Notes under the pieces: generated by a model
What the model saw: only the letters and a program-made list of their open reading frames with translations
What the model was told of the DNA's origin: nothing
Databases searched by the model: none
Part shown: in pieces, positions 8,509 to 31,900 of the stretch
Layout: each line of letters starts with the position of its first letter
Position numbering within the stretch: the first letter of the stretch is position 1
Made by a program: the position numbers and the translations under genes
Source of the DNA: Vicugna vicugna
Lineage: Eukaryota
DNA length: 64,000 bases
Reading direction: 5' to 3'
Assembly: GCA_013265495.1 (NCBI GenBank)
Contig: MU061578.1
Span: 3,481,308-3,545,307, forward strand

Positions 8509-8685
8509 NNNNNNNNNNNNNNNNNNNNNNNNNNNNNNNNNNNNNNNNNNNNNNNNNNNNNNNNNNNNNNNNNNNNNNNNNNNNNNNNNNNNNNNNNNNN
8601 NNNNNNNNNNNNNNNNNNNNNNNNNNNNNNNNNNNNNNNNNNNNNNNNNNNNNNNNNNNNNNNNNNNNNNNNNNNNNNNNNNNNN
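8509..8685. other. Assembly gap (177 N)
   Basis: Run of N. Confidence 1.
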
Positions 8686-9699: not shown

Positions 9700-12600
9700 C
9701 CTACATGGGCTAGGTTGGCCCTCAGGGGACAGGTGGGAGGGAGGGACCATCCTTGAGGACTTTGCCACACAGCTGGGGCTGGGCCAGTGGCCATCTTTTC
9801 AAGGCAGACAGCCTGTGTGCAGTGGGAATAAAATGACCCAGGGTGGGCACAATTAGAAGGGATTTTGTCTTTTCCAAAATAAATTAAAAATGTTCCTAAA
9901 CATATAACTTCAAAACACTTAGTGCATCCTCCAATGTTACTGTGTTGTGGGTCAAGGTCCCCCAAGAAATTATAAAGAAGTGGGACTCCGAGTGGCTGGA
10001 ATGTAGGAGCAGGCATGTGCAGCCCATGGAATCAAGGTGCCCGTGATCCACAGGACCCACCAAGACGCCCCCTATCAGGGACGTCCTGCTGTCCCCAGCA
10101 CTGTGGGGTCACCTGCTGAGAGGTGCCTAGCATTGAGTTTAGGGGCCCAGGAGTGGCAGGTGGGAGGAGTGGGGAGACTGCTGGGTTGGCCAGCCCCTGC
10201 CTGCGTGGCCGTGGTTGTGTGGAACAGGGGACTCGTTTCCCAGGGGCCTGCCTCAGAAAACTGTCCAAGTACTAGTTGGCCTCATACCCAGACCTTCTCA
10301 GGCCACCTCCATACCTTTTATAGGCTAGGGAAAATGTTGTTTGTTAGTTTGGATGGTCAACTAGGGTTCTCCTTTTGAGGTGAAGGTCTTCACACTCAGG
10401 GGTTCTGGGTAGATCCCCCAGATCTCTTCTGGTCCTGTGTGCCCCCCCACCCCATCTCAGTGGATGTGGAAACAAAAAGCCTCCAGGTTTGTCCCTGCAG
10501 ACCCTTCCACAGCCCTGTAAGTCTTCTCCAGACTCTGAGCTCTGGGGTGGGGGGACCCCAAATAGGGCAGGTCTGATGTGAGAGTGGGCCCCTGTGCCTC
10601 TTACTCTAGAATCTGAGAGAGAAAGTAGCCTTCTGTAGGCAAATATGCGGGCCTGTTCCCTGGCTGCCTGAGGGGTCCCTACCAAGCCCCTCAGGCTCTC
10701 TGTGAAGCCAGATTGCACCCCTGGGTTGAGCCGTGCTTTATTTGTTGAAGGGAATTACTGTGGACAATGAGCACATCATTAGCAGCATAATCAACACCGG
10801 TGCCTTCCCTCTGGGGCCGCCACATCTTGTCAACAGGTGTGATCCCAGCAACAGCCCTGGGAGGCCTGATGCACATGGCAATTAGTCACTAATGAGAGGC
10901 CTGCTTGACCTGCTCGGCAGGCAGGGCCAGGCTGGGAGAGAAGAGGGCCCAGGGAGAGCCTGGCAGCCCTCCAGTGTCCCCCCTCTGCTCCTGCCTGGTG
11001 GGGCTGCAAGAGGCAGCAGAAAGAGATGGTCACAGAGAGGCCCTGGCCCTGCAGTGGTGACGCTCCGACCTCGGGAGGACAGGTGCACACACATCTGTCC
11101 ACAGGCATGGAAGGTTGGCCCTACCCTGGCCCCAAGAGGACCAAGCAGGTGACCCAGAGGCTTCATCTCTGTGGGGACAGTGGGCCAAGCAGCACCAGCG
11201 GGCAAGCTGAGAGGAGAAGCCCCTCTATTGCCTGACCAGGCTCTGGGCCCAGCAGCTCCATCCTCTGCCACGGGTCCCAGGGAGGACGGCCAGGCCACTG
11301 GTCTGTGCTCTCGGGGGGCAAGCACCGGGCACAAAACTAGCTTGGATGGGGCAACTCCAAGCCATTTGTTAAACCACTGGCCTGTCCTGATGGTAGGTTT
11401 GCAAGTGGTTTGCAAGTGGTTTACGGTGTTGTTAGCCATGGCCCCATTAGAACATCAAGGTCGGGCTTGCTGGCAGCCCCGAGTTGCCTCTGCACCCCAA
11501 CTTTGTACTCAGCTCCCAAGTCATCAAGGAGCCATCTGGAGTATCTGTGGCAGGGGCGTGGGGCTGCCAGGTAGAGTAGGGGACCTCTGCAGGACCCCCA
11601 GTCCCAGGACCTCCCCCAGGCCTGCCTGCCCTATGGTGCTCCACACCCTTCAGATCTGCAGGCTCACCCTGCAGGTCTTGGTAACCTGGCTTCTGGAGAG
11701 GCAGCCCCTCTGCGTGTTGTGGGACCTGTGGGCCCCTAAGTAGTCGCAGGCCCCAACCCTGCACTCACAGCAGGTCTGGGGCTGGTGTACCCTAGGCAGG
11801 GGTTGAGGGGGGCATCCAGAGCTTCTCCACCAGCCTGGCCTGAGAAGATGACAGACCTAGAGATGCCTGACTGCCCACTCGGACCTCCCTGGGGTCAGTT
11901 TTCACAAACATGTCCATCTCTGGCACGCTGGCGACCAACACCCCCACTACGGGGGAACAGGCAACATCACTACTCCTCCGCTGCTACGTCTGACCCCCTT
12001 GTTACTCCCCCCATCTGTAGATCCCCCACCAACCCTGTGTGTGACCCCTGACGCTGTCCTTCCAGTCACCCGTCACCCAGCCCCTACTGCTTGGGACAGG
12101 CCCTTCCCTGCTCAGCCCTCGGCCCCGCCACCTTCTGGAGCACTCCTTGGACCTCCCCAGTGAGGGGAGCTCAGGCAGCCCCCACCCCAGGGGACAGCTC
12201 AGGGGCTGACCTGCACCGTGACTGGAGCCCACTTGGCCATTGGAAGCTCAGCTAGTTTTCTCTGTGATGTTTTTACTGGTTTGTGAAGGTCAGGTCTGAC
12301 CACTGACTGTGGGAGAGTCACCCTGGAAAGTGTGCTTTTGGGACCCAGCAGCCAAACCTGGGGAGCACCCAGCTTGTGAGATCATGGGCTCCCCTCAGGA
12401 GACCCCACCCCAGGCTCCCTGTCCTTCTCCCCTGACAATCTCTGCTCACCCAGCAGGGCCGCCACAGCTGGGAGTCCCCTGTACCTGCTGGAAGAGGAGG
12501 TCTTTCTTGTGCTGGGGGCACCTCCACTCTCAAGGAGGGAGCAGGTGGCCTTGGGGTATGTGGGGGACAGGGAGCCACTCTGCAGAGCAGACCCCGACAG

Positions 12601-12874
12601 GGCCCCCCTCACGTGTGCCCGGGGTGCTGTCCTCCCACTGTTCTGGCCCAGGAGAGCTGCAGCCCCGAATTATCTGAGGTTCTGTCCCATGTCTCCACAT
12701 CTGCCTTGGTTTCCCTTCTGTGGGGGGTGTGGAGGAGGTGACCTAGGACCCCTCCAGGGTCAGCCCTGCCCTCCAACCCTGCCCTCCCCAAGCACCCCGG
12801 GCTCCTCCACACCCCAATCTGGGCCCTTCTCTATTAGGTCACCCTCCCCACAGGCAGCCAAGGCAGTGGGCAGT

Positions 12875-12926
<52 letters not shown>

Positions 12927-15060
12927 TGTGTGTGTGTATAGCCTGTATTCTCTCAGAACTGGGGACATTCCGGGAGCCTGAGGACAGTGGGGAAGCAAAG
13001 TCACCTCAATGGTCTTGAGTGGTGGCCCCGCCACAGCCCGGCCACTCACCATCTGAAGCTGTCCTGGAACATGGTGGGGGCCTCGCAGTCGGCAAGGAGC
13101 TGAAGAAGGACCTGCCATGTGGGGTTGGCAATGCCAGGCAGGGCACAGGAATAGCCCGAGGGCAGGATGGGAGGGGCTGAGAGCACCACCCCAGCTGCCC
13201 AGGATGCCTGCCATGCCTCGAGGCTCACCTGGTGAGCTCCAGGAAGAGCTGGTCCAGGGCCTGGTCCACATCCAGCTTCCAGGTGATGGCACCTGAGGTC
13301 ATAGGGAAGGTGGCCAGCTGCGCCAGCACAAGTCTACCCAGGACCTGGGCCTGGGGTGTGCACTGCCTGTCAGCCCGGCCGTCCCTGGTGTCTGTCCTCC
13401 CACTTGTCTGCCCGAGGCACCCCACCCTCGTGCGCCCGCTTCCCGTGCTCCCCACCGCTGAGCCTTGGGTTCGAGCCCAGCAGGTGCTTAGTTGGACACG
13501 ATGCTGTTTCCCAGGTGCGTATCTAGCCACAGCTGGGAGTTTGCACCCTAGGGCCACTCAGATGTGTCGAGGGGAAGGGGTGCTCAGGGGCCCCTTCTCA
13601 GCCCATGCTGAGTTCAGATATCTGCAAAGGAGGCAGCCCTCAAGCCTAGGACCTGGGATGGGGCCTTCAGGGTCCAAGCCTGACCTCTGACTCTAGCCAG
13701 GGCTGTCCCCAGTGACTGCCCCAGGGCCTGGGACTGTGGTGGGGTGGGGGGCCAGAGGATTAAGGTGGCTCTGCCCACCCACCCTCACCCCCAGACACCT
13801 GCAGGTCAGGACATTTCTGCAGATGTTGTGGGTGCTGGTTCTGGGTGCAGCTGGAAGACAGTGAGGGAGCCCTTCCTTCTAGGGTCAGGGCACGTGTGGG
13901 TGGGGTCACCACCCAGGCCTCCTCAGACCCAGTGTCAGGGCTGCCCATGCCTGCCTGCTCCTACATCTGCTGGAAAATGTTGTGGGAGGTGTCCACCAGG
14001 ATCTGGGCCAGGACAATGCTGTCCATTACCAGCACAAAAGGCCACAGGGGAGCCTGGTGACAGAGTGCCACGTCCTGGCTGCACGGCTCTGGGATGCTGG
14101 GCCCCAGGCAGCAGGAGAGGTCTAGCAGGGGGTGACTGGGCAGTGCTGGGCAGCCAGGCATGAGGAACAGGAGGCAGTTGGGCAAATGGCAGCCCCACGG
14201 CCTTCTGCACCCCCAGCCCCATCCTCGGCCAGCACACTCAAGCACACAGCCAGCAGAACCAGCTGAGTTAGGGTTAGGAAGTGGTGACCTGGAGCAGAGG
14301 CCCACTGTATGTCTGCCCCAGGCTCCAAGCCAGCGGACTCTGGTCCCCTTTTCTATTTTGCCCAGACTGGGGGACAGGTTTTTTTATTTTGAGAAATCGG
14401 AGCAGGAGCCAACCTACTGAGCTTTGGGCACGGCTCCTGTCCCCTGGGAATGTGGGTCCTGCCAGGAGACCTAGCTGGCTGCCCTTGGCTTCATGGGGAT
14501 TACTGGATCAGAGCTACATGGGTCTACACTGGCAATGGAAACAGCCAAGCCAGAAGAGATTATTTATCCCACTTCTTAGGTGTGGCTGGAGGTGCCCTGA
14601 TGGGAGCAGGCTCAGCCAGGTGGAAAAAAACGCAAAAAGCTTTTCTTTTTTTTAATTGCAGAATAAACAGCCCCTAAATTGTTTTGTTCACTCAAAAATG
14701 GTGAACAAGCCAAGGGTAGCTGGAGGGCAACTCCTGACAGGACAGGCAGGGGGAGTGCGTGATGGGTAGGCGAGCAGGAGGTGGGCTGTGCACCAGGACT
14801 GCACCATGAGGAAAGTCTAGAGGGGCTCCCCCAGTGGGCTGCAGGGACTGGGCAGGAGGTGGGAACCAGGGCAACTGTCATCTTTCCACATTTTCTTACA
14901 TTTCTTTAAAGAGCATCACATACTTTTGCATATTAGGAAAAAAAATCTATTGCTGGGTTTGTCTCAGCATATGGTCACCAACACCTGCTGTGATCCACCT
15001 TTTGAATTTTGTAAATCTCCTGTTTTGAGTTCGAATTTCTAGGGTTCCTGCAAAAGTTGA
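9700..15060 (-). pseudogene. Decayed stereocilin-like (STRC/otoancorin/mesothelin superfamily) unprocessed pseudogene
   Basis: Minus-strand peptides match human STRC (recalled) in collinear order. Examples: GAGGAEGRG (14194-14220) vs GAGGAEAQG; LCHQAPLWPFVLVMDSIVLAQILV (within 13964-14065) vs [42 protein letters not shown] (13229-13350) vs QALGRL..YPRLTSQLFIDLS; GLRLLRGPQVPQHAEGLPLQ (11693-11752) vs [30 protein letters not shown] (11131-11157) vs LGPLVGFLG; SFLRQAPGKRV (10230-10262) vs SFLRQSGRHV; QAVCLEKMA (9789-9815) vs QAVAVTPEQMA. Retained splice sites, in-frame stops and frameshifts. Confidence 0.8.
12877..12936. repeat. (TG)n microsatellite, about 30 units with one TT interruption
   Basis: Direct reading. 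Confidence 0.98.
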
Positions 15061-16400: not shown

Positions 16401-16533
16401 NNNNNNNNNNNNNNNNNNNNNNNNNNNNNNNNNNNNNNNNNNNNNNNNNNNNNNNNNNNNNNNNNNNNNNNNNNNNNNNNNNNNNNNNNNNNNNNNNNNN
16501 NNNNNNNNNNNNNNNNNNNNNNNNNNNNNNNNN
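16401..16533. other. Assembly gap (133 N)
   Basis: Run of N. Confidence 1.
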
Positions 16534-19916: not shown

Positions 19917-22213
19917 AGTTGGCTGATCACCCTGGAACATCAGAGTCCCCACAAGCAGGGTCCCCCAGATCCTGTGGAGGTGATTGGGAGCTCTTAGCCC
20001 AGGGTCCAGGCTCATGACCATGGCCTCATCCGTGTGGAGTGGGGTCACATGGGAGGGCAGGCTTGGGAAGGGGAGTGGGGGACACCTCTGTCAGCACCTT
20101 TAGTCAAGCAGCTCTGGGTAGGAGCAGGGATTAAGTGGAGGCTGGTACTGGGACCCACCCTGCAGGGGACCCTGTCCAGCCCCACACAAGCAGGCTGGGG
20201 TGGTGGGGAAACCCCACCCCTGCCCCCTCTGTATGCCCCCTCCCTTGTTCCCACTGCACTTGGGGAGCAGTGAGGATCACCTCCCCTGTTCTCAGAGGGC
20301 AGTGCCCTCAGGGTCAACTCTACTCTAGCCCTAGCTACTCCTGACATGCTGTGTGACCCTAGGTTGGCCACACAACATCTCTGTGCTTAAGGCAGATAAA
20401 ATGACCCTGTGTCCAAGACCCTAAATCTGTGATCCATGCCCCTGCCCACCCTCACCAGAGGAACCTGAAGCTGGCAGGGAATGTGGTCTGAATTCATTTT
20501 CCATCATTTGAAGGCCAGACTTTGGGGACTGTGGTTAAGCTGGGGTGGGAGGTTCTGGAGGTGGGTGGGACAAGTGGGGCGGGAGAGAGCTTCAGCCAGT
20601 GTCCTGCAGCTGCACACCTGCTGGAGGCTATGAGCTGATGACCCCTGGGCTCGGGGGTTGGAGCTGACCATTCCTCTGTCACAGTCACAGCTACCTCTAT
20701 CTCACACCACTCTGTTGAGCTGGTGGTCCACTCAGATGCCAGACCCCACAGGCTAGCAGGGCAGGGATAGGAGGGCAGGAGCAGGGCCAGCCCTCTCTGT
20801 GGCAGACCCCACCCCCAGGTCCTGGATAGGGCTTGAATCACCTACCCCCGTGTGTATCAGCATCCGTGTAGGGCCCAGCACACAATAGGCACTCAGCGAG
20901 TATGAGGTGGTTAATGAGTGACAGGGGGCCAGGGGAATACTGGTCTTGGAGGGCTCAGGGTTGGAGATGGGACCATCCCAGGCCCAGAAAGGGAAGCATC
21001 AGAGCAGACTTGCATAAGGAGACAGAGTGCCATAGGGGACTGTTCCCTTGTCACACAAATATGCCTGCCCTAGACTGGCCGAAACAGATGTGGCTTCTGC
21101 AGGTCACACCTGGGTTACTCTGGAAGCTGCAGCTCCAAGACAGCTGAGGTGTGTCTGTGGCCCAGTCTGGCCTACCTGGGGGTAGGTTGCAGATTCCAGG
21201 GCCTATAGTGGGAGACCCCAGCTAGGGCACTAGGGGGGTCCCTGGTTACATGGGACGGGGGTAGTGGCTGAGAGAAGACAGCAGGGGCTGCACAGCCTTT
21301 GCCTGGCCTCACCCACCCCACAGGTAGGGGCCCCAGTCAGCGGCCCATTCTTCAGGGCACTCCCCCAGGCTGGGCTCTTTGCCTGGCTGAAAGCGGTTGC
21401 TGAGACATAAACGTGCCCCTCCCCCATTTCTGAGCTGGGGTGGGGCCCGACACAGGCCTTGGCGAAGGTTTGGGGGAGGGTATGGCTCCACTGCACTTGG
21501 CTGTAGGCGGCCTCCCTCTCTGGGTCTCTCTGGGAGGGCAAGAGTGGAAGGTGGTTTGGTTTCCTGCAAGCCCCCCTCTTTAGGGAGCAGCACCCCAGCC
21601 ACCTTCCACTCACACTGGTCCAGGCCTCTGTTTCCGGAAGAACCTCAGAAGGGAAACCAGGATGGCAGGTGGGCTGTGGCAGCCTCGTCTACCTAGGAGG
21701 GCCCTGGGATTACACAAAGCCAGGCACCTGTGGCTGTGGGTGGGTGGGGAGGACGGCCATGCTGCAGGTTGAGGGGTCAGCGTGACCCCCAGCCCCCAAA
21801 CTGCTCTGTCCCTCTGCTTGGGGTGGGGACACCAAGGCCAGCCAGGCCTTGCTTCCTTGCACACGAAACTCTCCCGCCCTGCCCCATGGGGAGAGAGGAT
21901 GGGCGCCCGCCTGGGCTCCCACAGCTGAGGGCCAGGCTGACTCAGACCTGACCCCCCTGGCAGAAGGGCAGGTTTCCCGGAGGAGGCGGGCCAGGCAGGC
22001 TGATTGGTCCTGAGAGGAGGGCCAGAGGCCACACACACAGACACTGCCACTGCTGGGGAGGCCTGTGAAGGTTTGAGCTGGTAGCCCTCCAGGGCCCTGA
22101 GACCCCTGCAGCCCCACAAGGCGCCACACTGGCCTGGGGCAGTATCGTGGGTGCAGGGAAGCGGTGGGGATGGGAAGTAGTGGGGACATCAGAGTGGCTG
22201 TCCTTCACAGACC

Positions 22214-25200
22214 ATGGCCTTGCAGACTGCTCGAACCCCACTGGAGTCCTATGGGACCTCAACTCATGGCAGCCTCCTGCTCCTGCTTCTAGGCCTCGGT
22301 GAGTAATGATGATGAGCTGTGGCAAAATACTGGAGTGCCAGAGAGCGTCCAAGGGTAGCTGTGGGTCCCTAGGGCTCGGGGCCTTAGGAAAGGCGCTACC
22401 TGCTCTATGCCTCCTTCCCTGGCTGTGGACAGTGCCCCCCAACCTTGCCCTAGGCAGGTGCCTCGAATCCTGGGCAGATGCTCTGAATCTAAGTAGGTGC
22501 CCTGAGCCCAGACAAGTGTCCTGAATCTCATCAGGTGCCTCAAGTCCCAGGTAGGCTGTCAGCCATATCTCTGCCCTGAGAGGTGACTATGTCCGGCACC
22601 CATGCTGGACTGCGGTGACCTATGGGGTTGGAGGTTGAGGCAGGGTGGTGATGGGGGCACAGGCCAAACTGAAGGTGCCCATGAGACAGGTGTCTGACTG
22701 CCCTGAGCAGCGAGGCCCCAGGAGGAGGCCTGTGCTCCCTGGTGTGGTGCTGCAGGACGTGATATCGTGGGGTGCAGGGGCCTAACCCTCTGCTTCTACA
22801 CCCATGGGGTGTGCACGGGGCTGGGAGGGGCCAGCTTTGTCTCCTTCCTCGCCAGGGTGGGGGACTGCAGCAGGCATTGCTAGAAGTTCCTGGCCATCCC
22901 CTTGAGCCTGGTGTGCCCTCCCCTGCAGGGTGGATGTTACCTTCCAGGGCCCAGGCTGCAGACACGGGATTGGTAAGGCCCCTCTGGGGAATCAAAGAGG
23001 GTTTTCTGGCCCTGGGTGGGGGTCCTTGAGCGCCAGGCTTCTCTGCTCAGTCCCAGCGCTGCTTTGTTCTCAGGGCCTCACGACCCCATGGCTGCAGCAC
23101 ACCTCCCGGGACCAGTCCTGGCCACAGCCTGAGCTGACTGTCATCATCCCAAGGGCCTGGCGGGGCACAGAGAGTGAGCACAGTGCCCAGCCCCATTGGG
23201 CGTCAGAAGATGTAGGGTGGGGGCTGGCATGTGATGTCTCACCTGCCTGCGCCTGTGGCCCTTCTTGTCAATCATGATGACCCAAGAGAGTGAACAGAAA
23301 CACCCCATTTTGCTGATGCATAAACTGAGACCCGGAGAAGTCATGTGTTGCCCAGGGTCTCAGTGTGGGTGTGGGAGGAAGAGGTTGATGGGAGAAGCCC
23401 AGTCCCCAACCCCCTGCCTACCCCTGCAGAGAAGGCCTGCCCCCCGGGGCGGAAAGCCCAAGTGGTGGATGAAAAACTCGTCTTCTACGAGGAGTGGGAG
23501 CTGGAGGCCTGTGTGGACGGGGCCCTGCTGGCTGCTCAGATGGACCGGGTGAACTTGATACCTTTCACCTACCAGCATCTCCACATTTTTAAGCGCAAAT
23601 TGGACAAGGTAGTTCAGGACTCGGGCTCCCACCTGCCTGCCATAGCTCTGCTTTCCCAGCTGCCCGGGGAGTGGCTGTGGCCCTCATGGTCACTTTCCGG
23701 GGAAGTTCTACCCACAGGGATACCCAGAGTCCCTGATCCAGCACCTGAGGTACTTCTTCCTTTCGGTCACCCCTGAGGACATCTACAAGTGGAATGTGAC
23801 ATCCCTGGAGACTGTGAAATCTCTGCTCGAAGTCAGCAAAGGACACAAGATGGATGCTCAGGTGACCATCTACCACGGTGGGGAGGGGCAGACACAGCAT
23901 GTGAGGTTGTGCAGGTCCAAGGGGATACATCTCTCGCTGCCCCAAGCCACCTAGTGGCCTCCTCCCACAGGTGGCTGCCCTGATTGCCCGCTATGTAGTG
24001 AGAGGGGGCCAGCTGGACAAGGCCACCCTGGAGACCCTGGCCACCCTCCACCCTACCTACCTGTGCCTTCTCAGCCCTGAGCAGCTGGGCTCCATGAGCC
24101 TCAATGTTGTCTGGTGAGTCCAGGGCTCTGTCAGGTGTGGTGAGCGTGCCATGCTCCCAGCTCACTGCCTGGCCCTGTGCTACCTCCCCAGGGTGACCAG
24201 GCCGCAGGACCTGGATGCATGCAGCCCACAGCAGATAGCCGTCCTCTATCCCAAGGCCCGCATTGTCTTCAAGAACATGACAGGGTCTGAATACTTTGAG
24301 AATATCAAGCCCTACCTGGGTGAGCCAGGGAGGACATGGCTGGGGAGGGGAGGGTGATGCCTGAAGCTCCCGCATCCATGCTGCCAGGTTCCCCCCTCAC
24401 TGGGCAGCCTGTTGGCCGTGTGACCAAAGTGTACCCTGTGTCCCTCCAAGTGTGTATAGGCTGAGATCCTGTGAGTTTTGGGCACCTCCAGCCTTTCTTC
24501 CAACCCAGAGGGTCAGGTGGTCACCAGGCAAAGGAATTTTTGGGAAAACTCTCAGGAAAGGAAGTGGCTTCTGGTAGCCTGTGGTCAGAGGGTGAGACTA
24601 GGGGCTGTTGCAAGCTCTCACACTTAGAGGGCCTTCTCCCATGGGCAGGTGGGGCCCCCATGGAGGACCTGCGGGCTCTCAGTCAGCAGAACATAAACAT
24701 GGACCTGGCCACGTTCAAGAAGCTGCAGACAGAGGCTGTGCTGGTACAACCACAGAGAAGGGGGGCATCCAGGGGTGGGGCCTTTGAGGGGTAGCCAAGG
24801 CCCTCTCCAAAGTCTGGAGGGGCCAAGGCAGGGTCTGGATGGGGAGGCATGGGGTGGGTGGTTTGGACACAGTAGAGGAAAGCAACCTTCTGGGAAAGGC
24901 AAGTGGACCCTGACTGCCGTCTGGGGGCCCTGGCAGCCGCTGACCATTGCTGAGGTGCAGAAACTTCTGGGCCCAAACCTGGTGGGCCTGAAGGCTGAGA
25001 AGGGGAACAGCCTTGTGCGGGACTGGATCTCCCGGCAGTCACAGGATGACCTGGACAGCCTGGGGCTGGGGCTCCATGGCGGCATCCCCAATGGCTACCT
25101 GGTTCTGGACTTCAACGTCCGAGGTGGGCTGGGGTGGCCGGGCGGGTGGGGTCAGGGCAGAGTGAGGGGGAGAGTGTGAGTCTTCCCTTCTCCACACAGA

Positions 25201-25288
25201 GGCCCTCTCGGGAGGCCCCCACCTTCTCAGACCAGGACCTGTGCTCATTGTGACCTCAAATCTGCTCCTGGCCTTCATCCTGAGCTGA
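22214..25288 (+). CDS. MSLN: Mesothelin, short form (401 aa) lacking most of the MPF domain; signal peptide and GPI signal
   Basis: Exons: 22214-22298, 22929-22972, 23074-23173, 23430-23608, 23706-23861, 23971-24113, 24192-24319, 24649-24743, 24937-25123, 25200-25288 (1206 nt, phases continuous). Peptides MALQTARTPL.., KACPPGRKAQVVDEKLVFYEEWELEACVD.., GGAPMEDLRALSQQN.., GGIPNGYLVLD.., and a hydrophobic C-terminus. Confidence 0.95.
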
Positions 25289-25379
25289 GCCCGTTGCTCT
25301 GGAGGCCCTGCTGTGGAGGCCCTGCCTGGCTGGGAGCAGGCCTGGGTGGTCCCTGTCCGACCTGAGGGCACCGAAGCAC

Positions 25380-25385
25380 AATAAA
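25380..25385 (+). terminator. MSLN poly(A) signal AATAAA
   Basis: About 90 nt after the stop codon. Confidence 0.85.
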
Positions 25386-25730
25386 AGAAGACCCATACCC
25401 CCCTCGCAGTGGTGCCCCCTGGTGTTTTGAGGACTGGGTGGGAGGGCCCCGGGTGGGAGGGCCCCTGATGGCTGTGACCCCATAAAGCATGGTTCCCTGG
25501 GTTGCAGCCCCCTCCTGTTTGCACCTGGAAAGAGGAGGGACTCCAGGCAGGAGGGCTCTTGGGACTTTCCTGCTGCTGTTTCCCCTGAGGCCAGGCCAAC
25601 ACTCAGTGTGGCTTCTAGTGACACTGTCACCCCAGGGGACTCCCTGGAAGTCCTGACCCCAGCTAAGAGGGTCTCTGTGCCTTCCTTAGGCCCAGAGCAA
25701 AGGAACACAGGCAGGAAGATCCCCTCGTCC

Positions 25731-25910: not shown

Positions 25911-28900
25911 CTAGGACATGGGGCGTGGCCAGGTCCCCTGGGCCTGGTGCCTGTGTCTTGGCCTGAGTAGTTGTCCAGCTCCACTTAATAGCCCCAGTTT
26001 TCCTGCATGTGGTGCTGGGGCAGCACTGCCTTCAGAAGCTATGGTGCAGATGCCCCATGAGTGGTCCCAGCTAGGCTCCAGGGTGCCCCAATACAGCAGC
26101 CACAGGAGGCCTGAGGGCAGGGCTATGGCAAGTAGCAGGTACCCAAGGTGGGCTGGAGGGCTGCCTGTAGGTGGAACAAGGAGGGAGCACCCTTCAGTCT
26201 TGCTGGGTGCCCCCCGTTCCCACTCAAGGCTGTCCCACAGCCTCCGAGGCCTGGGCAGCCCCTGCCCTAGGCTGGAGGCTCACACCATCCCTGTGGGTGG
26301 GAAAAGCAATGAAGACCCCCATGCACAGCCACTCTTTTGGGCCAAGACAGGGACCTCATAGCTTCCCTACCCTCCACCTTCTGCAGCTCAGTGGGTTTGG
26401 GGGAGACAATTGTGTCCTTCACTAACTCGGCAGGTGATGCAGGGGAAAGCCAGTGTCACCCAGATGTCATCCGAGGAGGCAGATGGAAAGATTTGGCCAG
26501 CAGAGAATGAGACTGAGTGAAGATGAGAAGCTAGTAGCAGTCAGGGGTCTGCAGAGGGCCCAGGGCACAGAGGGCAAAGGGGGGATGTCCTGCTGAGGGG
26601 GAGGGTGGGTGCGGTTGTACCTGAGCTGGGGGCATCACTCCCAGGCTGGTCTGAGGTGGGGGCTAGCTGGGGTATCCAGGGTGTGGTGCTGGGGGTCCCA
26701 GTGGTTGAGTGGGCTGGGCCAGTGGGGCCAGTAGGGTCCGTGTCCAGGCCCAGCTCACCCAGGGCTGACTGGTTGAGGCTGCGGAGCCAGGAGCTGATGG
26801 TCGGGTGGCTGCGAGCCTTCTGCAGGTCCCCTACATTCTGGCCTAGCAGTGTGGTCACGTTGCCCACACTCAGGCTCTGCAAGGGAACCAGGGGGCCATA
26901 GAAGGAGGGACATGGGTCAATGTTTAACCAATCCAGGGGTGAGACCTGGCAGAACCAGCCTGGAGAAGTGACCTGGGGCCCACACTATCTGTACACCTCC
27001 AATTTGGGGATATTGGGGCCTGCAGACATGACCTAGGGCTCCCCAGCTCGGCCAGCCCTGCCCCACACCTGATGGGCAGCCCCTGGGCTCACCTGAAGCA
27101 CACAGGGGTTCAGGTTGGTAAAGGTGTCAATGTCCATGGAGACGTTAGCCTGGGCTAGGTGCCGCAGCTCCTCCACCGGGGCACCGCCTGGGGGTAGGGC
27201 AGTGGTGAGGGCTCTGGAGGAGGGCAGGGCTCCAGAGGAGGGGTGTCGCACACAGGGCGGGGTCTCACCGAGGTAGGGGCGCATGAGGCGGTAGTAGGCA
27301 GCCGCTGTCCTGGCACTGCTGAAGGCCTCTCGGGCCTTGGCGTAGAGCACGTTCTTCCGGCTCTGAGGGCAGGAGGAGATATCCAGGGTGCCGGCCAGCC
27401 TGGGGGAGGGTGTGGGGCTGAGGGCAGGCCAGCAGCCCCTCATCCTCTGGACATGGGGCCTGGCCCTCTCTCCCTGAGCCACAGCTTTCCTCTTCACCTT
27501 GGCATTGGGCTGACTAGTGTGTCCCCCAAATTCACATCCACCCAAAACCTCAGAATGTGACCTTATTTGGAAATAGGGTCTTTCCTATGTGCAGATATAA
27601 TCAAATTGAGATGAGGTCATGCTGATTTCGGGTGAGCCCTAAATCTAACCACTGGTCATAAGAAGAAATTTGGACACAGACATGGGGAAGATGGTTATGT
27701 GATGATGGGGGTAGAGATGGGGGTGATGCAGCACCAGAAGCTGGAAGAGGTAGGAAGAACCATCCCCTACAGGTTTCAGAAAGAGGTGGGTCTGCGACAC
27801 CATAATTTCAGACTTCTGGCCTCCAGACTGTGAAAGGATACATCTCTGCTGTTTGTAGCCACTCCCCTTGTTATGGTGGCCATAAGAAATGAGCATACCT
27901 CTGATGGCCTGGCCTGGGCCCCAGCCTGAGCCTCAGTGTCCCCCAACCTTCCTTGGCTAAAGAGTGGAGTTGGCTCAGAGCTGTGGAGGGTGAGTTGCTG
28001 GGTGGGCTCACCGGAACTCTGAGGGCTGGATGGCCTGGATCTGCCGGGGGCTCATCCAGCAGAGGCGGGAGCCCCCGATGGCCACAAGCAGGGCGCCAGT
28101 GACAGTGCCGTTATGGTCCAGGAACTTCTGCAGGATGGCCTGTGGGTAGGGTTGGGGTCAGCAAGGCTGGAGTCAGTGGAGCCTCCTACAGCCCCCACTG
28201 CCCTCACCTCCGTCTGGTTCTCCAGGGCCCCATCTGGGGCCAGCAGGGCCACAACTGTGTCCCTGGATGTGATGTGCCACCGGCCGATCTCACCATGGGA
28301 GTAGAGGTAGACCAGCGAGGGGATGAGCTGCAGCTGCTCCTCAGGGATGCCGCCCGGGTAGACCTGCAACGAGTGGTGGGTGGGGGTCAGGCCACACCGC
28401 TGGCCCCCAACTCACCTCCCACTACTGGTCCCCAGCGCACCTGAGCCAACTTGGTCTTGACGACTTGCTGGCACTCGGCAGGCAGCGGGTGCTGCAGCAG
28501 GGGGTCCAGGTTGGCCCTGAGCACGCGGTTGCCCAGGCAGGACTCGAGCTGTGAGCAGTCGTAGCGCACCAGGAAGAGGTTGTCCTGCAGCGTGGCTGCA
28601 GTGATGTCGCCGCGGATGCAGGTTCTCCCTGTGGCTGGGTGGGGTGCTGGTGTTGAGGACCGAGCTGGTCAGCCTCGGCCTGAGCTGACAACTGCTGCTG
28701 ATTTTGGGCCCCACTTCACTCCTAACCATGACCCACCCATGACTCTCGTCAAACTTGACCCCCTAGCCAAATACTTGGCCCAGACCAGACTGAGTCAACT
28801 CTGACCTTGACCTCAACTCCCAGTCCTGCCCCACCAGACTCTGACCACTCTGCTGAGGCTGGATGAAGACCCCTAGGCCAAGCTCAGGGGATTCAGTGTG

Positions 28901-31900
28901 GGTTGCCATGTCTCTGGTGCCCCCACTCCTGGATGAGGACCCTGAGCAGGGGGAGACGCAGTGTCCCCAGACACGGTGGCCACACTGACCTGTGTCCCTC
29001 TTGAACTGTGAGGAAACCAACTTGGCCTTGGCCTCGAGGAAGCAGGTGACAAAGCGCCTGGCATCATGCTGGCTGAGCTGCCCCTCCCGGCACATGGCCA
29101 CCATGCTGCCGAAGAAGTCCAGGCCCACGGCCTGGAGGGATGGGCCTGGAGAATCCACACCCTAGGGAGGGCCACCAGAGCCACCCGTCCCCTCCTCCCT
29201 CCCCTCAGACAGAAACTCTGTGATGGAGAGTGACCAGGGACACGACTTGGGCATCAGAATGTCTGTACAGCCGACCCGCAGGCCTAGACGGGCTGATGGA
29301 AGGTCGGCTGGAGCCCCTACCCTGCCCCAAGGTGCTGCCCTACCTCCTGCACCTGCATCCACAGGCCAGGGCTGATATAGGTGGCCAGAGGTCCCAGAGC
29401 CTGCAGCCCCTCCAGGTTCCAGGAGCCAGGGGGCCTGACGTGCAAAGGGGGGCTCTGTATCAGGTCTGAGTACAGTTCCCAGGGCTTGCCCAGCAGAGAT
29501 TCTTCCACCCCAGGCCTCTGGGGAGGGGGACTGCGGGGCCCAGCAGGTGGGGACAGCACCCCAAACCCATACACTGTAGGCAGCAGGGTCAGGGTGGGAT
29601 GTGAGCTGGGTCAGAGGCTGGAGGTCAGTGGGGCTGTGGACACCAGTCTCCAGGCCGCCTCCTCTCTCATCTCAAGGAGGGGAGGCCTGGGCAGAAGGGA
29701 CGGGCCCCCACCCACCCGAGCTTGGTCCTGCCACTGGCCAGCAGCCTGTTGAGGGCGAACTGCTGGGTGGCTGTCAGCCGGGGGCAGCGCAGCAGGTTCT
29801 GCAGCACACGGGGGTCTGCGGCCATGATGCTTGATGCGTCCATGTCACACACCAGGACCCCGAGGAGCAGCAGGTCAGAGGCACTGAGCCGTGGACGGGG
29901 CCCTCCCTGCAGGATAGCAGGTCAGCATGAGCTTGGTCCCACTCACCCATCCTGTCCTCGCCCGGCCAGCCCACAGCGCCTACCAGGCAGGCCAGGGCCC
30001 TGTGCTGCAGGGCGGCCCTCTGGTCAGGCAGGTTGGCCAGCAGTTCTGTGTCTCCCTGGGCGGCACGATGGATGAAGGCCCGGCAGTTGGCTTCTCTCAC
30101 CTGTGTCAGGCTGCGGGAAGGTAAGGAGCTGTCAGTAGGGCAGGGCCAGCTGGGGGGCCTCCAAATGACTGAGGTGCCCCTGGGAGCATGCTCAGCCCAG
30201 CCAGCCAGACGCTGGGCAGGGAGGGGCACTCACTCATAGAAGAGCAGCAGGTCCGGAGGGTGGAGCTCAAAGTCACGCTGGAGGCCTTGCCGGGCGGCCA
30301 GGTTGGCCAGGCAGCTGAGCTGGGCAGCGCAGGCACTTTGTCATGCCCTCGTCCCGCCTGGGCCCTACCCAGCCCCTTCCTCTCTGCCCGTCACCCTCCC
30401 CTCAGTGTGGGGCCCTCCTTGGGCCAAGCCCCTCACCCACCTCTCCACCCTCACCCCAAGTCCACCTGTCCCTTCTTTCCACCTGCCGGCTCTCTGTTAC
30501 TGGACTCCATGTCTTCCTCTTCTTGCCTCAACCTCCACGTCAGAACAGGCCTCAGAATGGGTCAAACCTAGCCTGAGAGCCCCCAACTTCCGGCATCAGG
30601 CTCCTGCCCACCCCAGCCCCCACGGCACCACAGTGGTTCCTGGAGTCCACTTATCCGCTGCCGACCCCGCCTGGGCTTCTTATCCCACTCACTTGGCCTA
30701 CTCTGGGGTTGTTTCAAATTTATTACTAGTTTTATATTAATTTTATAACAAGACAAAATGACAGCTTTTCTTCCTTTCTTTTTTTAAACTCAGGGGCTGG
30801 TGACTTTGTGTCAGCTGTGGGTCCTGGTGGGCTCAACCGGCCCTTCTCGTGGCCCAGGTAGGGGAGAGGCTAGCAGGCTGGAAGATCCCCCTGGGAGTCC
30901 GGACAACTTGGAGGCCAGGTGGGCAAGCCCTCGTCAAACCCAGAGCAAGAGGCAGGAGTCTGTGGGCAATTGGCTGAGAAATCCTGGCAATGGTCCAAAG
31001 TGGGCCGTGCTGGAAAATCACTCAAGGGAAGGAGATGCTGACCTCAGAGGCCAACTTCATGTCCCATCAGGTGACCTGAGAGGTGCATCTTAGGTGGCTG
31101 TGAAATTGGCAGGTTGGCCTACAAACAATGGATGCAGTTCTCTAGTGCGGGGTCCCTGTGCTCCAGGAGAGCTGCTCTATGTCCCGGCCCTGAGGTCCTG
31201 GCCTGGGTCCTCTGCTAAGGATGCCTCCCCTCCTGCCTGTCCCCGGGGCGCTTCTCCAGGGAGTCTACCCTTGCCCTCGACACCCAGGTGCTCACTGCAG
31301 GTGCCGCTGCTGACCTGCCAGGCTCTGAGGGGGACCTGCTGCAATGCCATCCTCCTGATCAAAGCTGCAAGCTGGTCCCGGGACAGCTGGCTGGCCGGCT
31401 GGCACCAGAAGCCTTGCAGGAGGGAGGTGTTGGCACTGGGCAGAAAGGAGGCAGACAGTGAGGGGCAGAGGGAGTGGGAGGCTGGGGGCCTCCAGGCTGC
31501 AGCATGCAGGATGATCACTCTTCAACACTGAGGAGTGAGACAGGAAGTGCAGACGGCCAGGCTCTAGTTTCACAGACACGCATGTGCACACACTCATTCC
31601 TCTGAGAGTACCTGGTTGGTGCCAGGCACCGAGCCATGGGTGGGATTAAAAGTGGCCCCTGAGTCCAGAGCGTCCAGACTCTGAGTCTACGCTTCCTCTG
31701 AGGCCTGGTTCCAGAGTTTAGGGCTCCATGGTCCCAGCGATGGCTGAGAGTTTGGAGAGCACCTGCCAGGCACCCACAGCCAGGCATTCCTCATGATGTG
31801 AATCTAATACAATTCATGCACGGGGAGGGGTCATGTCTCAGCTGGTCCAACTTGGCCTCCAGCTCTGCCTGATCAGTCAGCATAGTGGTCAACTGATTCA

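What the first reader, a model, noticed from the sequence alone, without database searches (positions are those of the whole stretch)
22929..23173. Mesothelin has lost the MPF domain by a clean in-frame deletion of six exons
Seen in sequence: the 44-nt exon GWMLPSRAQAADTGL (22929-22972) is followed, after one 101-nt GT-AG intron with no gap, by the 100-nt exon GLTTPWLQHTSRDQSWPQPELTVIIPRAWRGTE (23074-23173). In human MSLN (recalled) the homologous exons GWVQPSRTLAGETGQ and GIVAAWRQRSSRDPSWRQPERTILRPRFRREVE are separated by six exons encoding about 222 aa, most of megakaryocyte potentiating factor. Both junction ends are phase 0, so the product is an intact 401-aa protein: signal peptide, short linker, mature mesothelin, GPI signal. 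All other exon lengths match human except a one-codon-longer last exon. Inference: this lineage makes membrane mesothelin but no MPF, a natural domain knockout. It may be shared with other artiodactyls and already present in annotations without comment.
Basis: partly seen in the sequence, partly recalled or inferred. Interest (0 to 1): 0.8.

Follow-up and report, generated by a model that had tools for sequence, protein, structure and literature searches.

The report
Mesothelin gene lacking its MPF exons
This South American camelid's mesothelin gene really does lack the six exons that encode megakaryocyte potentiating factor, but the same ancient deletion is carried by all laurasiatherian mammals checked and was published in 2011, so the finding is correct but ordinary.

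Summary
A 44-nt exon (22929-22972) and a 100-nt exon (23074-23173) are separated by a 101-nt GT-AG intron. The ten-exon MSLN model gives a 401-aa protein, 400/401 identical to alpaca XP_006204304.1.

It is not an assembly artefact. Contigs from two other individuals of the species span the locus without gaps. RNA contigs of a close relative, read as Camelus, join the two exons directly.

It is not lineage-specific. Mesothelins of about 400 aa with the same junction are annotated in camelids, hippo, whales, bovids, pig, equids, rhino, carnivores, bats and pangolin. All 83 MPF-bearing hits are Euarchontoglires. Pig, donkey, panda and bat genes are 3.1-3.5 kb and carry an orthologous intron of about 100 nt.

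Against mouse lemur, the intron is the first ~50 nt of ancestral intron 2 fused to the last ~43 nt of intron 8. Six exons (672 nt, 224 codons) are missing.

This is the deletion of Kim & Hahn 2011 (Int J Mol Med 27:289), cited in PMC11417096, which reports that dog mesothelin lacks MPF. Verdict: real, already known.

Untested side leads: decayed MPF exons in tree shrew, a different deletion in a titi monkey assembly, and erosion of the furin site in MPF-less species.

The parts
22214..22298 (+). MSLN exon 1: start codon and most of the signal peptide (85 nt coding)
   Evidence: ATG at 22214 and GT donor at 22299. RNA contigs X1 and X2 join 22298 to 22929.
22929..22972 (+). MSLN exon 2 (44 nt): end of the signal peptide and first residues after it. 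Ends in phase 0.
   Evidence: Orthologous to mouse lemur exon 2, L005 1929-1972, also 44 nt.
22973..23073 (+). Fused intron, the deletion scar (101 nt, GT..AG). About 22973-23022 derives from the 5' end of ancestral intron 2. About 23031-23073 derives from the 3' end of ancestral intron 8. The breakpoint lies within about 23023-23030.
   Evidence: Local alignments to L005. The orthologous intron is about 95-105 nt in pig, donkey, panda and Hipposideros. RNA contigs skip exactly these 101 nt. DNA contigs of two other individuals are collinear.
23074..23173 (+). MSLN exon 3 (100 nt), orthologous to exon 9 of the full-length gene: the last part of the pro-region, ending just past the former furin site. 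The motif reads R-A-W-R here and R-A-R-R in Camelus.
   Evidence: Pfam PF06060 positions 268-300, alignment to L005 3979-4084, furin motif survey.
23430..23608 (+). MSLN exon 4 (179 nt): N-terminus of mature mesothelin, including the conserved Y..W..E residues of the MUC16/CA125-binding region
   Evidence: Pfam E 1e-30, positions 302-360. RNA joint 23173 to 23430. The residue names come from PMC11417096; the sequence is.
23706..23861 (+). MSLN exon 5 (156 nt; alternative acceptor at 23718 gives 144 nt)
   Evidence: RNA contig X1 record 2 supports the 23706 acceptor.
23971..24113 (+). MSLN exon 6 (143 nt)
24192..24319 (+). MSLN exon 7 (128 nt)
24649..24743 (+). MSLN exon 8 (95 nt)
24937..25123 (+). 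MSLN exon 9 (187 nt)
   Evidence: Pfam E 2e-28, positions 536-596.
25200..25289 (+). MSLN exon 10, coding part with the stop codon: hydrophobic C-terminal tail (putative GPI signal). An AATAAA lies at 25380-25385.
   Evidence: RNA contigs cover the stretch to 25400. The GPI function is inferred from homology.
26718..30693 (-). Context only: a paralogous mesothelin-family gene (MSLNL-like), tail to tail with MSLN. It keeps its own N-terminal region, which is weakly similar to MPF.
   Evidence: tblastn hits of full-length mesothelins on the minus strand. A minus-strand PF06060 gene sits in the same position in pig, donkey, panda and bat.

Best explanation
The window holds the MSLN gene of a South American camelid (closest to alpaca). 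It carries the ancient laurasiatherian deletion of about 2 kb that fused intron 2 to intron 8 and removed exons 3-8, which encode almost all of megakaryocyte potentiating factor. Exon 2 ends and old exon 9 begins in phase 0, and the six lost exons total a multiple of three, so splicing across the ~100-nt fused intron keeps the frame. The product is a 401-aa precursor: signal peptide, a residual pro-peptide of about 39 aa, mature mesothelin with the MUC16-binding residues, and a C-terminal GPI-type tail. Shown here: the genomic structure, its presence in independent individuals, the spliced junction in RNA of a sister genus, orthology of the fused intron across four orders, and the breakpoints. 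Inferred: signal-peptide cleavage, GPI anchoring, whether the weakened R-A-W-R site is still cut, and that no MPF-like activity is made from elsewhere in the genome.
For: The sequence and gene model come, with Pfam PF06060 hits on the exons and profile positions ~45-267 absent. The model is 400/401 identical to alpaca XP_006204304.1. All Camelus and Vicugna RefSeq models are 397-409 aa.

DNA contigs X18 (6475 bp, 7 differences, 0 gaps) and X19 (7996 bp, 10 differences, 0 gaps), from other samples and studies, span the locus. RNA contigs X1 and X2 carry the joints 22298>22929 and 22972>23074 at depths 48 and 6. X1 has Cys13, as in Camelus (22251 A>G).

No MPF-like coding sequence lies anywhere on the MSLN strand of the window. 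Mesothelins of about 400 aa with the same junction occur in Artiodactyla including whales, Perissodactyla, Carnivora, Chiroptera and Pholidota. All 83 MPF-region hits are primates, colugos, rodents or lagomorphs.

Pig, donkey, panda and Hipposideros genes are 3068-3481 bp, with a collinear exon 2, ~100-nt intron and exon 3 at 76-82% identity. Mouse lemur has six intervening exons of 672 nt, and its intron 2 start and intron 8 end match the two halves of the window's intron.

Literature: PMC11417096 reports that the deduced dog mesothelin lacks MPF. It cites Kim & Hahn 2011 for the same exon deletion in cow, pig, horse, panda, hedgehog and dog.
Against: No RNA from the window's own species was laid; both RNA runs carry camel-type variants. 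Kim & Hahn 2011 could not be read here, so its content is known only through the citing paper, and I do not know whether camelids were in it. Afrotherian, xenarthran and marsupial genes were not examined. The direction of change (loss rather than gain) therefore rests on three things: the intron halves, the decayed exons in tree shrew, and weak MPF-like similarity in the paralogue. Cleavage and anchoring of the protein are untested.
Confidence: 0.95

Rival explanations
1. Assembly collapse: the six exons exist in the animal but were dropped from this assembly.
For: MSLN lies in GC-rich sequence (about 60% GC), where assemblies often fail.
Against: Contigs assembled independently from two other individuals in two studies are collinear over the intron with no gaps. 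There is no N run or repeat at the site. RNA of a sister genus joins the exons directly. Four other orders show the same structure.
Confidence: 0.01
2. A deletion private to camelids, independent of those in other mammals, which would make it a new lineage-specific domain knockout.
For: Independent MPF losses may exist elsewhere (tree shrew and titi monkey).
Against: The fused intron aligns base for base with that of pig, donkey, panda and a bat, with the same length class and the same two halves. The protein junction is identical across laurasiatherian orders. One ancestral event is far more economical.
Confidence: 0.02
3. The MPF exons have moved rather than been lost: they survive elsewhere in the locus (for example in the relic noted at 9700-15060) and are used by another transcript.
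For: Another scan note (s1-234042) reports a stereocilin-like relic upstream, and mesothelin and stereocilin are related families.
Against: tblastn with four full-length mesothelins at E<=1 finds nothing for residues ~45-265 on the plus strand or at 9700-15060. The only weak hits are to the minus-strand paralogue at 29.7-30.7 kb. RNA contigs start at exon 1 and run straight into exons 2 and 3.
Confidence: 0.02

Closest known systems
Laurasiatherian MSLN exon deletion (Kim DS, Hahn Y. Int J Mol Med 2011;27:289-93, PMID 21132261), as summarised in PMC11417096
   Same: Same gene and same loss of the MPF-coding exons, explained there by joining of two introns. Reported for cow, pig, horse, panda, hedgehog and dog. 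The window's intron is orthologous to that of pig, horse-family and panda genes.
   Different: Nothing of substance. The window adds a camelid example, and I do not know whether camelids were in that paper. The breakpoint mapping against mouse lemur was redone independently here.
Dog mesothelin (PMC11417096, Front Vet Sci 2024)
   Same: A precursor without the MPF part, with the Y/W/E residues of the CA125-binding region and a GPI-type tail conserved. Jackal and dog proteins share the junction.
   Different: Dog keeps a full R-D-R-R furin motif. The window has R-A-W-R. The camelid protein has not been studied experimentally.
Full-length MPF/mesothelin precursor of primates and rodents (about 622-642 aa; e.g. 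mouse lemur XP_012593320.2, mouse isoform 1)
   Same: Orthologous exons 1-2 and 9-16 with identical lengths for most exons, 60-68% identity in the mature part, and the same neighbouring paralogue.
   Different: These carry six more exons (224 aa in mouse lemur) that encode MPF, released by furin at R-F-R-R. That motif is present in 74 of 78 MPF-bearing sequences, against 32 of 68 complete short ones.

Membership tests
Mesothelin (MSLN orthologue, Pfam PF06060) | Sequence match to the mesothelin family profile above the curated cut-off | tested here: met
   Four exons taken singly score 46-107 bits against a cut-off of 25.8. Exon 3 scores 24.7 bits, E 8e-06.
Mesothelin (MSLN orthologue, Pfam PF06060) | Orthology to annotated MSLN rather than to the MSLNL paralogue | tested here: met
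   400/401 identity to alpaca mesothelin XP_006204304.1. The best hits are all named mesothelin. The paralogue lies separately on the minus strand.
Mesothelin (MSLN orthologue, Pfam PF06060) | Conserved exon structure and synteny (tail to tail with a mesothelin-family gene) | tested here: met
   Exon lengths 85, 44, 179, 156, 143, 128 and 95 equal those of mouse lemur. The neighbour arrangement matches pig, donkey, panda and bat.
Mesothelin (MSLN orthologue, Pfam PF06060) | N-terminal signal peptide and C-terminal GPI-anchor signal | not testable with these tools
   A hydrophobic leucine run at residues ~20-28 and a hydrophobic C-terminal tail are visible. No predictor or experiment was available.
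Mesothelin (MSLN orthologue, Pfam PF06060) | Furin site R-X-K/R-R releasing the N-terminal fragment | tested here: not met
   The window has R-A-W-R, the minimal R-X-X-R only, while Camelus has R-A-R-R. Whether it is cleaved is unknown.
Mesothelin (MSLN orthologue, Pfam PF06060) | MPF domain (profile positions ~45-267) | tested here: not met
   Absent from the gene and from the window. This absence is the finding.
Laurasiatherian MPF-exon deletion allele | Exon 2 and old exon 9 adjacent, separated by one short fused intron | tested here: met
   101-nt GT..AG intron. The equivalent intron is about 95-105 nt in four other orders.
Laurasiatherian MPF-exon deletion allele | Same breakpoints, meaning an orthologous scar and a single event | tested here: met
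   Collinear alignment at 76-82% identity through the intron. The two halves match lemur intron 2 and intron 8.
Laurasiatherian MPF-exon deletion allele | The junction is used in mRNA | tested here: met
   RNA contigs X1 and X2 carry it, from a camel-type relative and not the window's own species. PMC11417096 matched a partial dog RT-PCR amplicon (exons 5-8) to predicted variant XM_038669678, whose deduced protein lacks MPF.

The most novel reading that the evidence does not exclude
MPF may be dispensable enough to have been lost more than once, followed by decay of the now pointless furin site. Beyond the single laurasiatherian deletion, the tree shrew assembly keeps recognisable MPF exons with frame-breaking indels and an in-frame stop, while its mature-mesothelin exon is clean. 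A titi monkey assembly has a different deletion, from intron 2 into exon 8, with a TTAGGG-like repeat at the joint. Among MPF-less species the R-X-K/R-R motif survives in only about half, and here it reads R-A-W-R. If these are real and not assembly or annotation faults, MSLN would be a small natural experiment on the function of MPF and of the pro-peptide cleavage.
Probability: 0.3. Interest if true: 0.35.

Novelty: already known. Interest (0 to 1): 0.1.

Why it matters
Little is new for the window itself. It is one more species carrying a published, clade-wide exon deletion that RefSeq already annotates. The practical points are modest. Camelids, like dogs, cattle and pigs, cannot yield MPF as a serum marker. 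Antibodies or assays against the MPF part of human mesothelin have no target in them. A mesothelin of about 400 aa in a laurasiatherian genome should not be flagged as a truncated or misassembled gene. The clade-wide loss, together with the normal platelet counts of knockout mice mentioned in PMC11417096, argues that MPF has no indispensable role.

Tried and rejected
- **Spliced protein as a query.** Searching with the whole spliced protein was not possible by reference. I used single exons and then the stored alpaca protein instead.
- **First exon coordinates.** My first coordinates were off by one and gave stops; they were corrected.
- **MAFFT on mixed lengths.** A global alignment of long and short proteins scattered the short N-termini. 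I replaced it with direct listing of the N-termini.
- **Kim & Hahn 2011.** The paper is not held, and a phrase search found only the citing paper.
- **Tupaia RefSeq protein.** It is not on record for locus retrieval. The older 588-aa model gave the locus.
- **Spurious contigs.** Two DNA contigs with only 22-nt matches at 23877-23898 and 25121-25142 (records 6 and 8) are short matches from another locus and were ignored.
- **Rejected readings.** Assembly collapse, a camelid-private deletion and relocated MPF exons; see the rival explanations.
- **Not done.** I did not search for afrotherian, xenarthran or marsupial orthologues, and I made no structure prediction, because neither would change the verdict.

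Full report
**1. The observation**

- Exon 2 is 44 nt, preceded by AG and followed by GT.
- The intron is 101 nt and contains no N.
- Exon 3 is 100 nt, followed by GT.

The only N runs in the window are at 8509-8685 and 16401-16533. Ten exons with canonical splice sites run from the ATG at 22214 to the stop ending at 25289. They splice into 401 codons, or 397 with a nearby alternative acceptor for exon 5. Exon 2 ends and exon 3 begins in phase 0.

Single-exon translations match Pfam PF06060 (Mesothelin) with E-values down to 1e-30. Exon 3 lies on profile positions 268-300 and exon 4 on 302-360, so roughly positions 45-267 have no counterpart.

**2. Whether the gap is real**

I laid two DNA runs and two RNA runs on 22100-25400.

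DNA contigs came from two other samples of the window's species, in two different studies. They cover the locus collinearly: one 6475-bp contig spans the whole stretch with 7 differences and no gaps. A 7996-bp contig spans 22100-25018 with 10 differences and no gaps. That rules out an assembly collapse.

RNA contigs from a closely related organism join 22298 to 22929 and 22972 to 23074 with GT..AG ends, at word depths 48 and 6. They continue through the later exons. The RNA carries A>G at 22251, which turns Tyr13 into the Cys13 of Camelus proteins, so this is camel RNA rather than RNA of the window's own species.

tblastn with four full-length mesothelins finds nothing for residues ~45-265 on the MSLN strand anywhere in the window. 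That includes the relic at 9700-15060 noted by another reader. The only weak hits are to the minus-strand paralogue at 26.7-30.7 kb.

**3. Whose gene it is and who shares the gap**

A search with exon 9 found a 405-aa representative. Its cluster holds RefSeq mesothelins of Camelus bactrianus, C. ferus, C. dromedarius and Vicugna pacos, all 397-409 aa for the main isoforms. The window's protein is 400/401 identical to alpaca XP_006204304.1 and 386-387/401 identical to the camels. The window is therefore from a South American camelid.

Searching with the alpaca protein returned mesothelins of about 400 aa from many laurasiatherians:
- hippopotamus, baleen and toothed whales, bovids, deer, pig and peccary;
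- donkey and rhinoceros;
- many carnivores and many bats;
- pangolin.

Primates and rodents returned about 620-650 aa. The N-termini show the same join in all these orders: the end of exon 2 runs straight into the start of the old exon 9.

Conversely, a search restricted to the MPF part of the mouse lemur protein returned 83 proteins. All were from primates, colugos, rodents or a hare, and none was laurasiatherian.

**4. One event or many**

The genes of pig (3068 bp), donkey (3221 bp), panda (3481 bp) and the bat Hipposideros (3405 bp) are as compact as the window's 3076 bp. Exon 1 through exon 3, introns included, aligns collinearly with the window at 67-74% identity. The segment of exon 2, intron and exon 3 aligns at 76-82%, with an intron of about 95-105 nt in every species.

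Mouse lemur (L005) has six exons of 50, 121, 86, 130, 194 and 91 nt between the orthologous exons. That is 672 nt or 224 codons, with phase 0 on both sides. The other exon lengths equal the window's.

The first ~50 nt of the window's intron match the start of lemur intron 2. The last ~43 nt match the end of lemur intron 8. The breakpoint therefore lies at about 23023-23030. This is a single ancestral deletion of about 2 kb that joined two introns.

**5. What is known**

A full-text search found PMC11417096 (Front Vet Sci 2024). It matched a partial dog cDNA amplicon (exons 5-8) to a predicted transcript and reports that the deduced precursor lacks the MPF part. [quoted passage not shown]

According to the citing paper, that study found the loss in cow, pig, horse, panda, hedgehog and dog, and attributed it to non-homologous end-joining of introns. 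The 2011 paper itself is not held.

The window's feature is that published deletion seen in one more laurasiatherian. The scan's own notes hold nothing on it besides the neighbouring relic.

**6. How it works**

Shown:
- the frame-preserving gene structure;
- its transcription in a sister genus;
- conservation of the mature part, including the Tyr, Trp and Glu that PMC11417096 names as functionally important in human mesothelin (the F-Y-E-E-W-E-L-E stretch).

Inferred from homology:
- removal of a signal peptide of about 36 aa;
- a residual pro-peptide of about 39 aa;
- GPI anchoring through the hydrophobic tail.

The furin motif that frees MPF in primates and rodents (R-F-R-R) reads R-A-W-R here and R-A-R-R in camels. 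Across the sequences collected, R-X-K/R-R is present in 74 of 78 MPF-bearing proteins but in only 32 of 68 complete short ones. These counts are not phylogenetically independent. They are consistent with relaxed constraint on cleavage once there was no MPF to release.

**7. Side observations outside the window**

Tree shrew: RefSeq gives a 392-aa protein with the same exon join, yet the locus still holds MPF exons (L007). Orthologues of exons 4, 6, 7 and 8 are 73-83% identical to lemur. They carry indels that break the frame and an in-frame stop, whereas the first mature-mesothelin exon has no indel.

Titi monkey: the assembly (L006) lacks everything from about 60 nt into intron 2 to the last ~40 nt of exon 8. 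A TTAGGG-like repeat sits at the joint.

Both rest on single assemblies that I could not check with reads.

**8. Verdict**

The feature is clade-wide, annotated and published. Novelty: already known. Interest is low.

Noticed in passing
L007:14200-15700 (Tupaia chinensis KB320600.1): The tree shrew MSLN locus still holds orthologues of MPF exons 4, 6, 7 and 8. They carry frame-breaking indels and an in-frame stop, while the first mature-mesothelin exon is clean. RefSeq XP_006146423.1 (392 aa) skips them with the same exon-2-to-exon-9 join. This may be an independent loss of MPF outside Laurasiatheria, or errors in a 2013 assembly.
   Followed up: partly
L006:1985-2110 (Plecturocebus cupreus CM080820.1): The titi monkey assembly lacks sequence from about 60 nt into intron 2 to the last ~40 nt of exon 8, with GGGTTAGGGTTAGGG at the joint. 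The annotated protein is 374 aa without MPF. The breakpoints differ from the laurasiatherian ones. It could be a real deletion or an assembly fault; this was not resolved.
   Followed up: partly
window 23155-23166: The former furin site reads R-A-W-R in this genome against R-A-R-R in Camelus. Among the collected sequences, R-X-K/R-R is kept in 74/78 MPF-bearing proteins and 32/68 complete MPF-less ones, which suggests decay after the loss of MPF.
   Followed up: partly
window 23173>23706 (joint in run X2): One low-depth RNA contig (depth 2) skips exon 4 (179 nt), which would shift the frame. It is probably a minor or aberrant splice form in the camel-type sample.
   Followed up: no
window 23947-23970: The 24 nt upstream of exon 6 read in frame (P-P-S-G-L-L-P-Q). 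They correspond to the 8-aa insertion of the longer camelid isoforms (405 and 409 aa), so this is an alternative acceptor.
   Followed up: no
window 24690-24698: The third N-glycosylation sequon of primate mesothelin, N-V-S in the gorilla orthologue, reads N-I-N in camelids, so that site is probably lost. The other two sequons (N-V-T and N-M-T) are kept.
   Followed up: no
window 9700-15060: Another scan note (s1-234042) calls this a stereocilin-like gene relic. Full-length mesothelins give no tblastn hit there at E<=1, so it does not hold the missing MPF exons. I did not examine it otherwise.
   Followed up: partly
P0021 (manatee, 512 aa), P0028 (grey squirrel, 434 aa), P0005 (bison, 427 aa): Several annotated mesothelins have unrelated-looking N-termini upstream of the old exon 9. 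They look like gene-model artefacts around this locus and were not checked.
   Followed up: no
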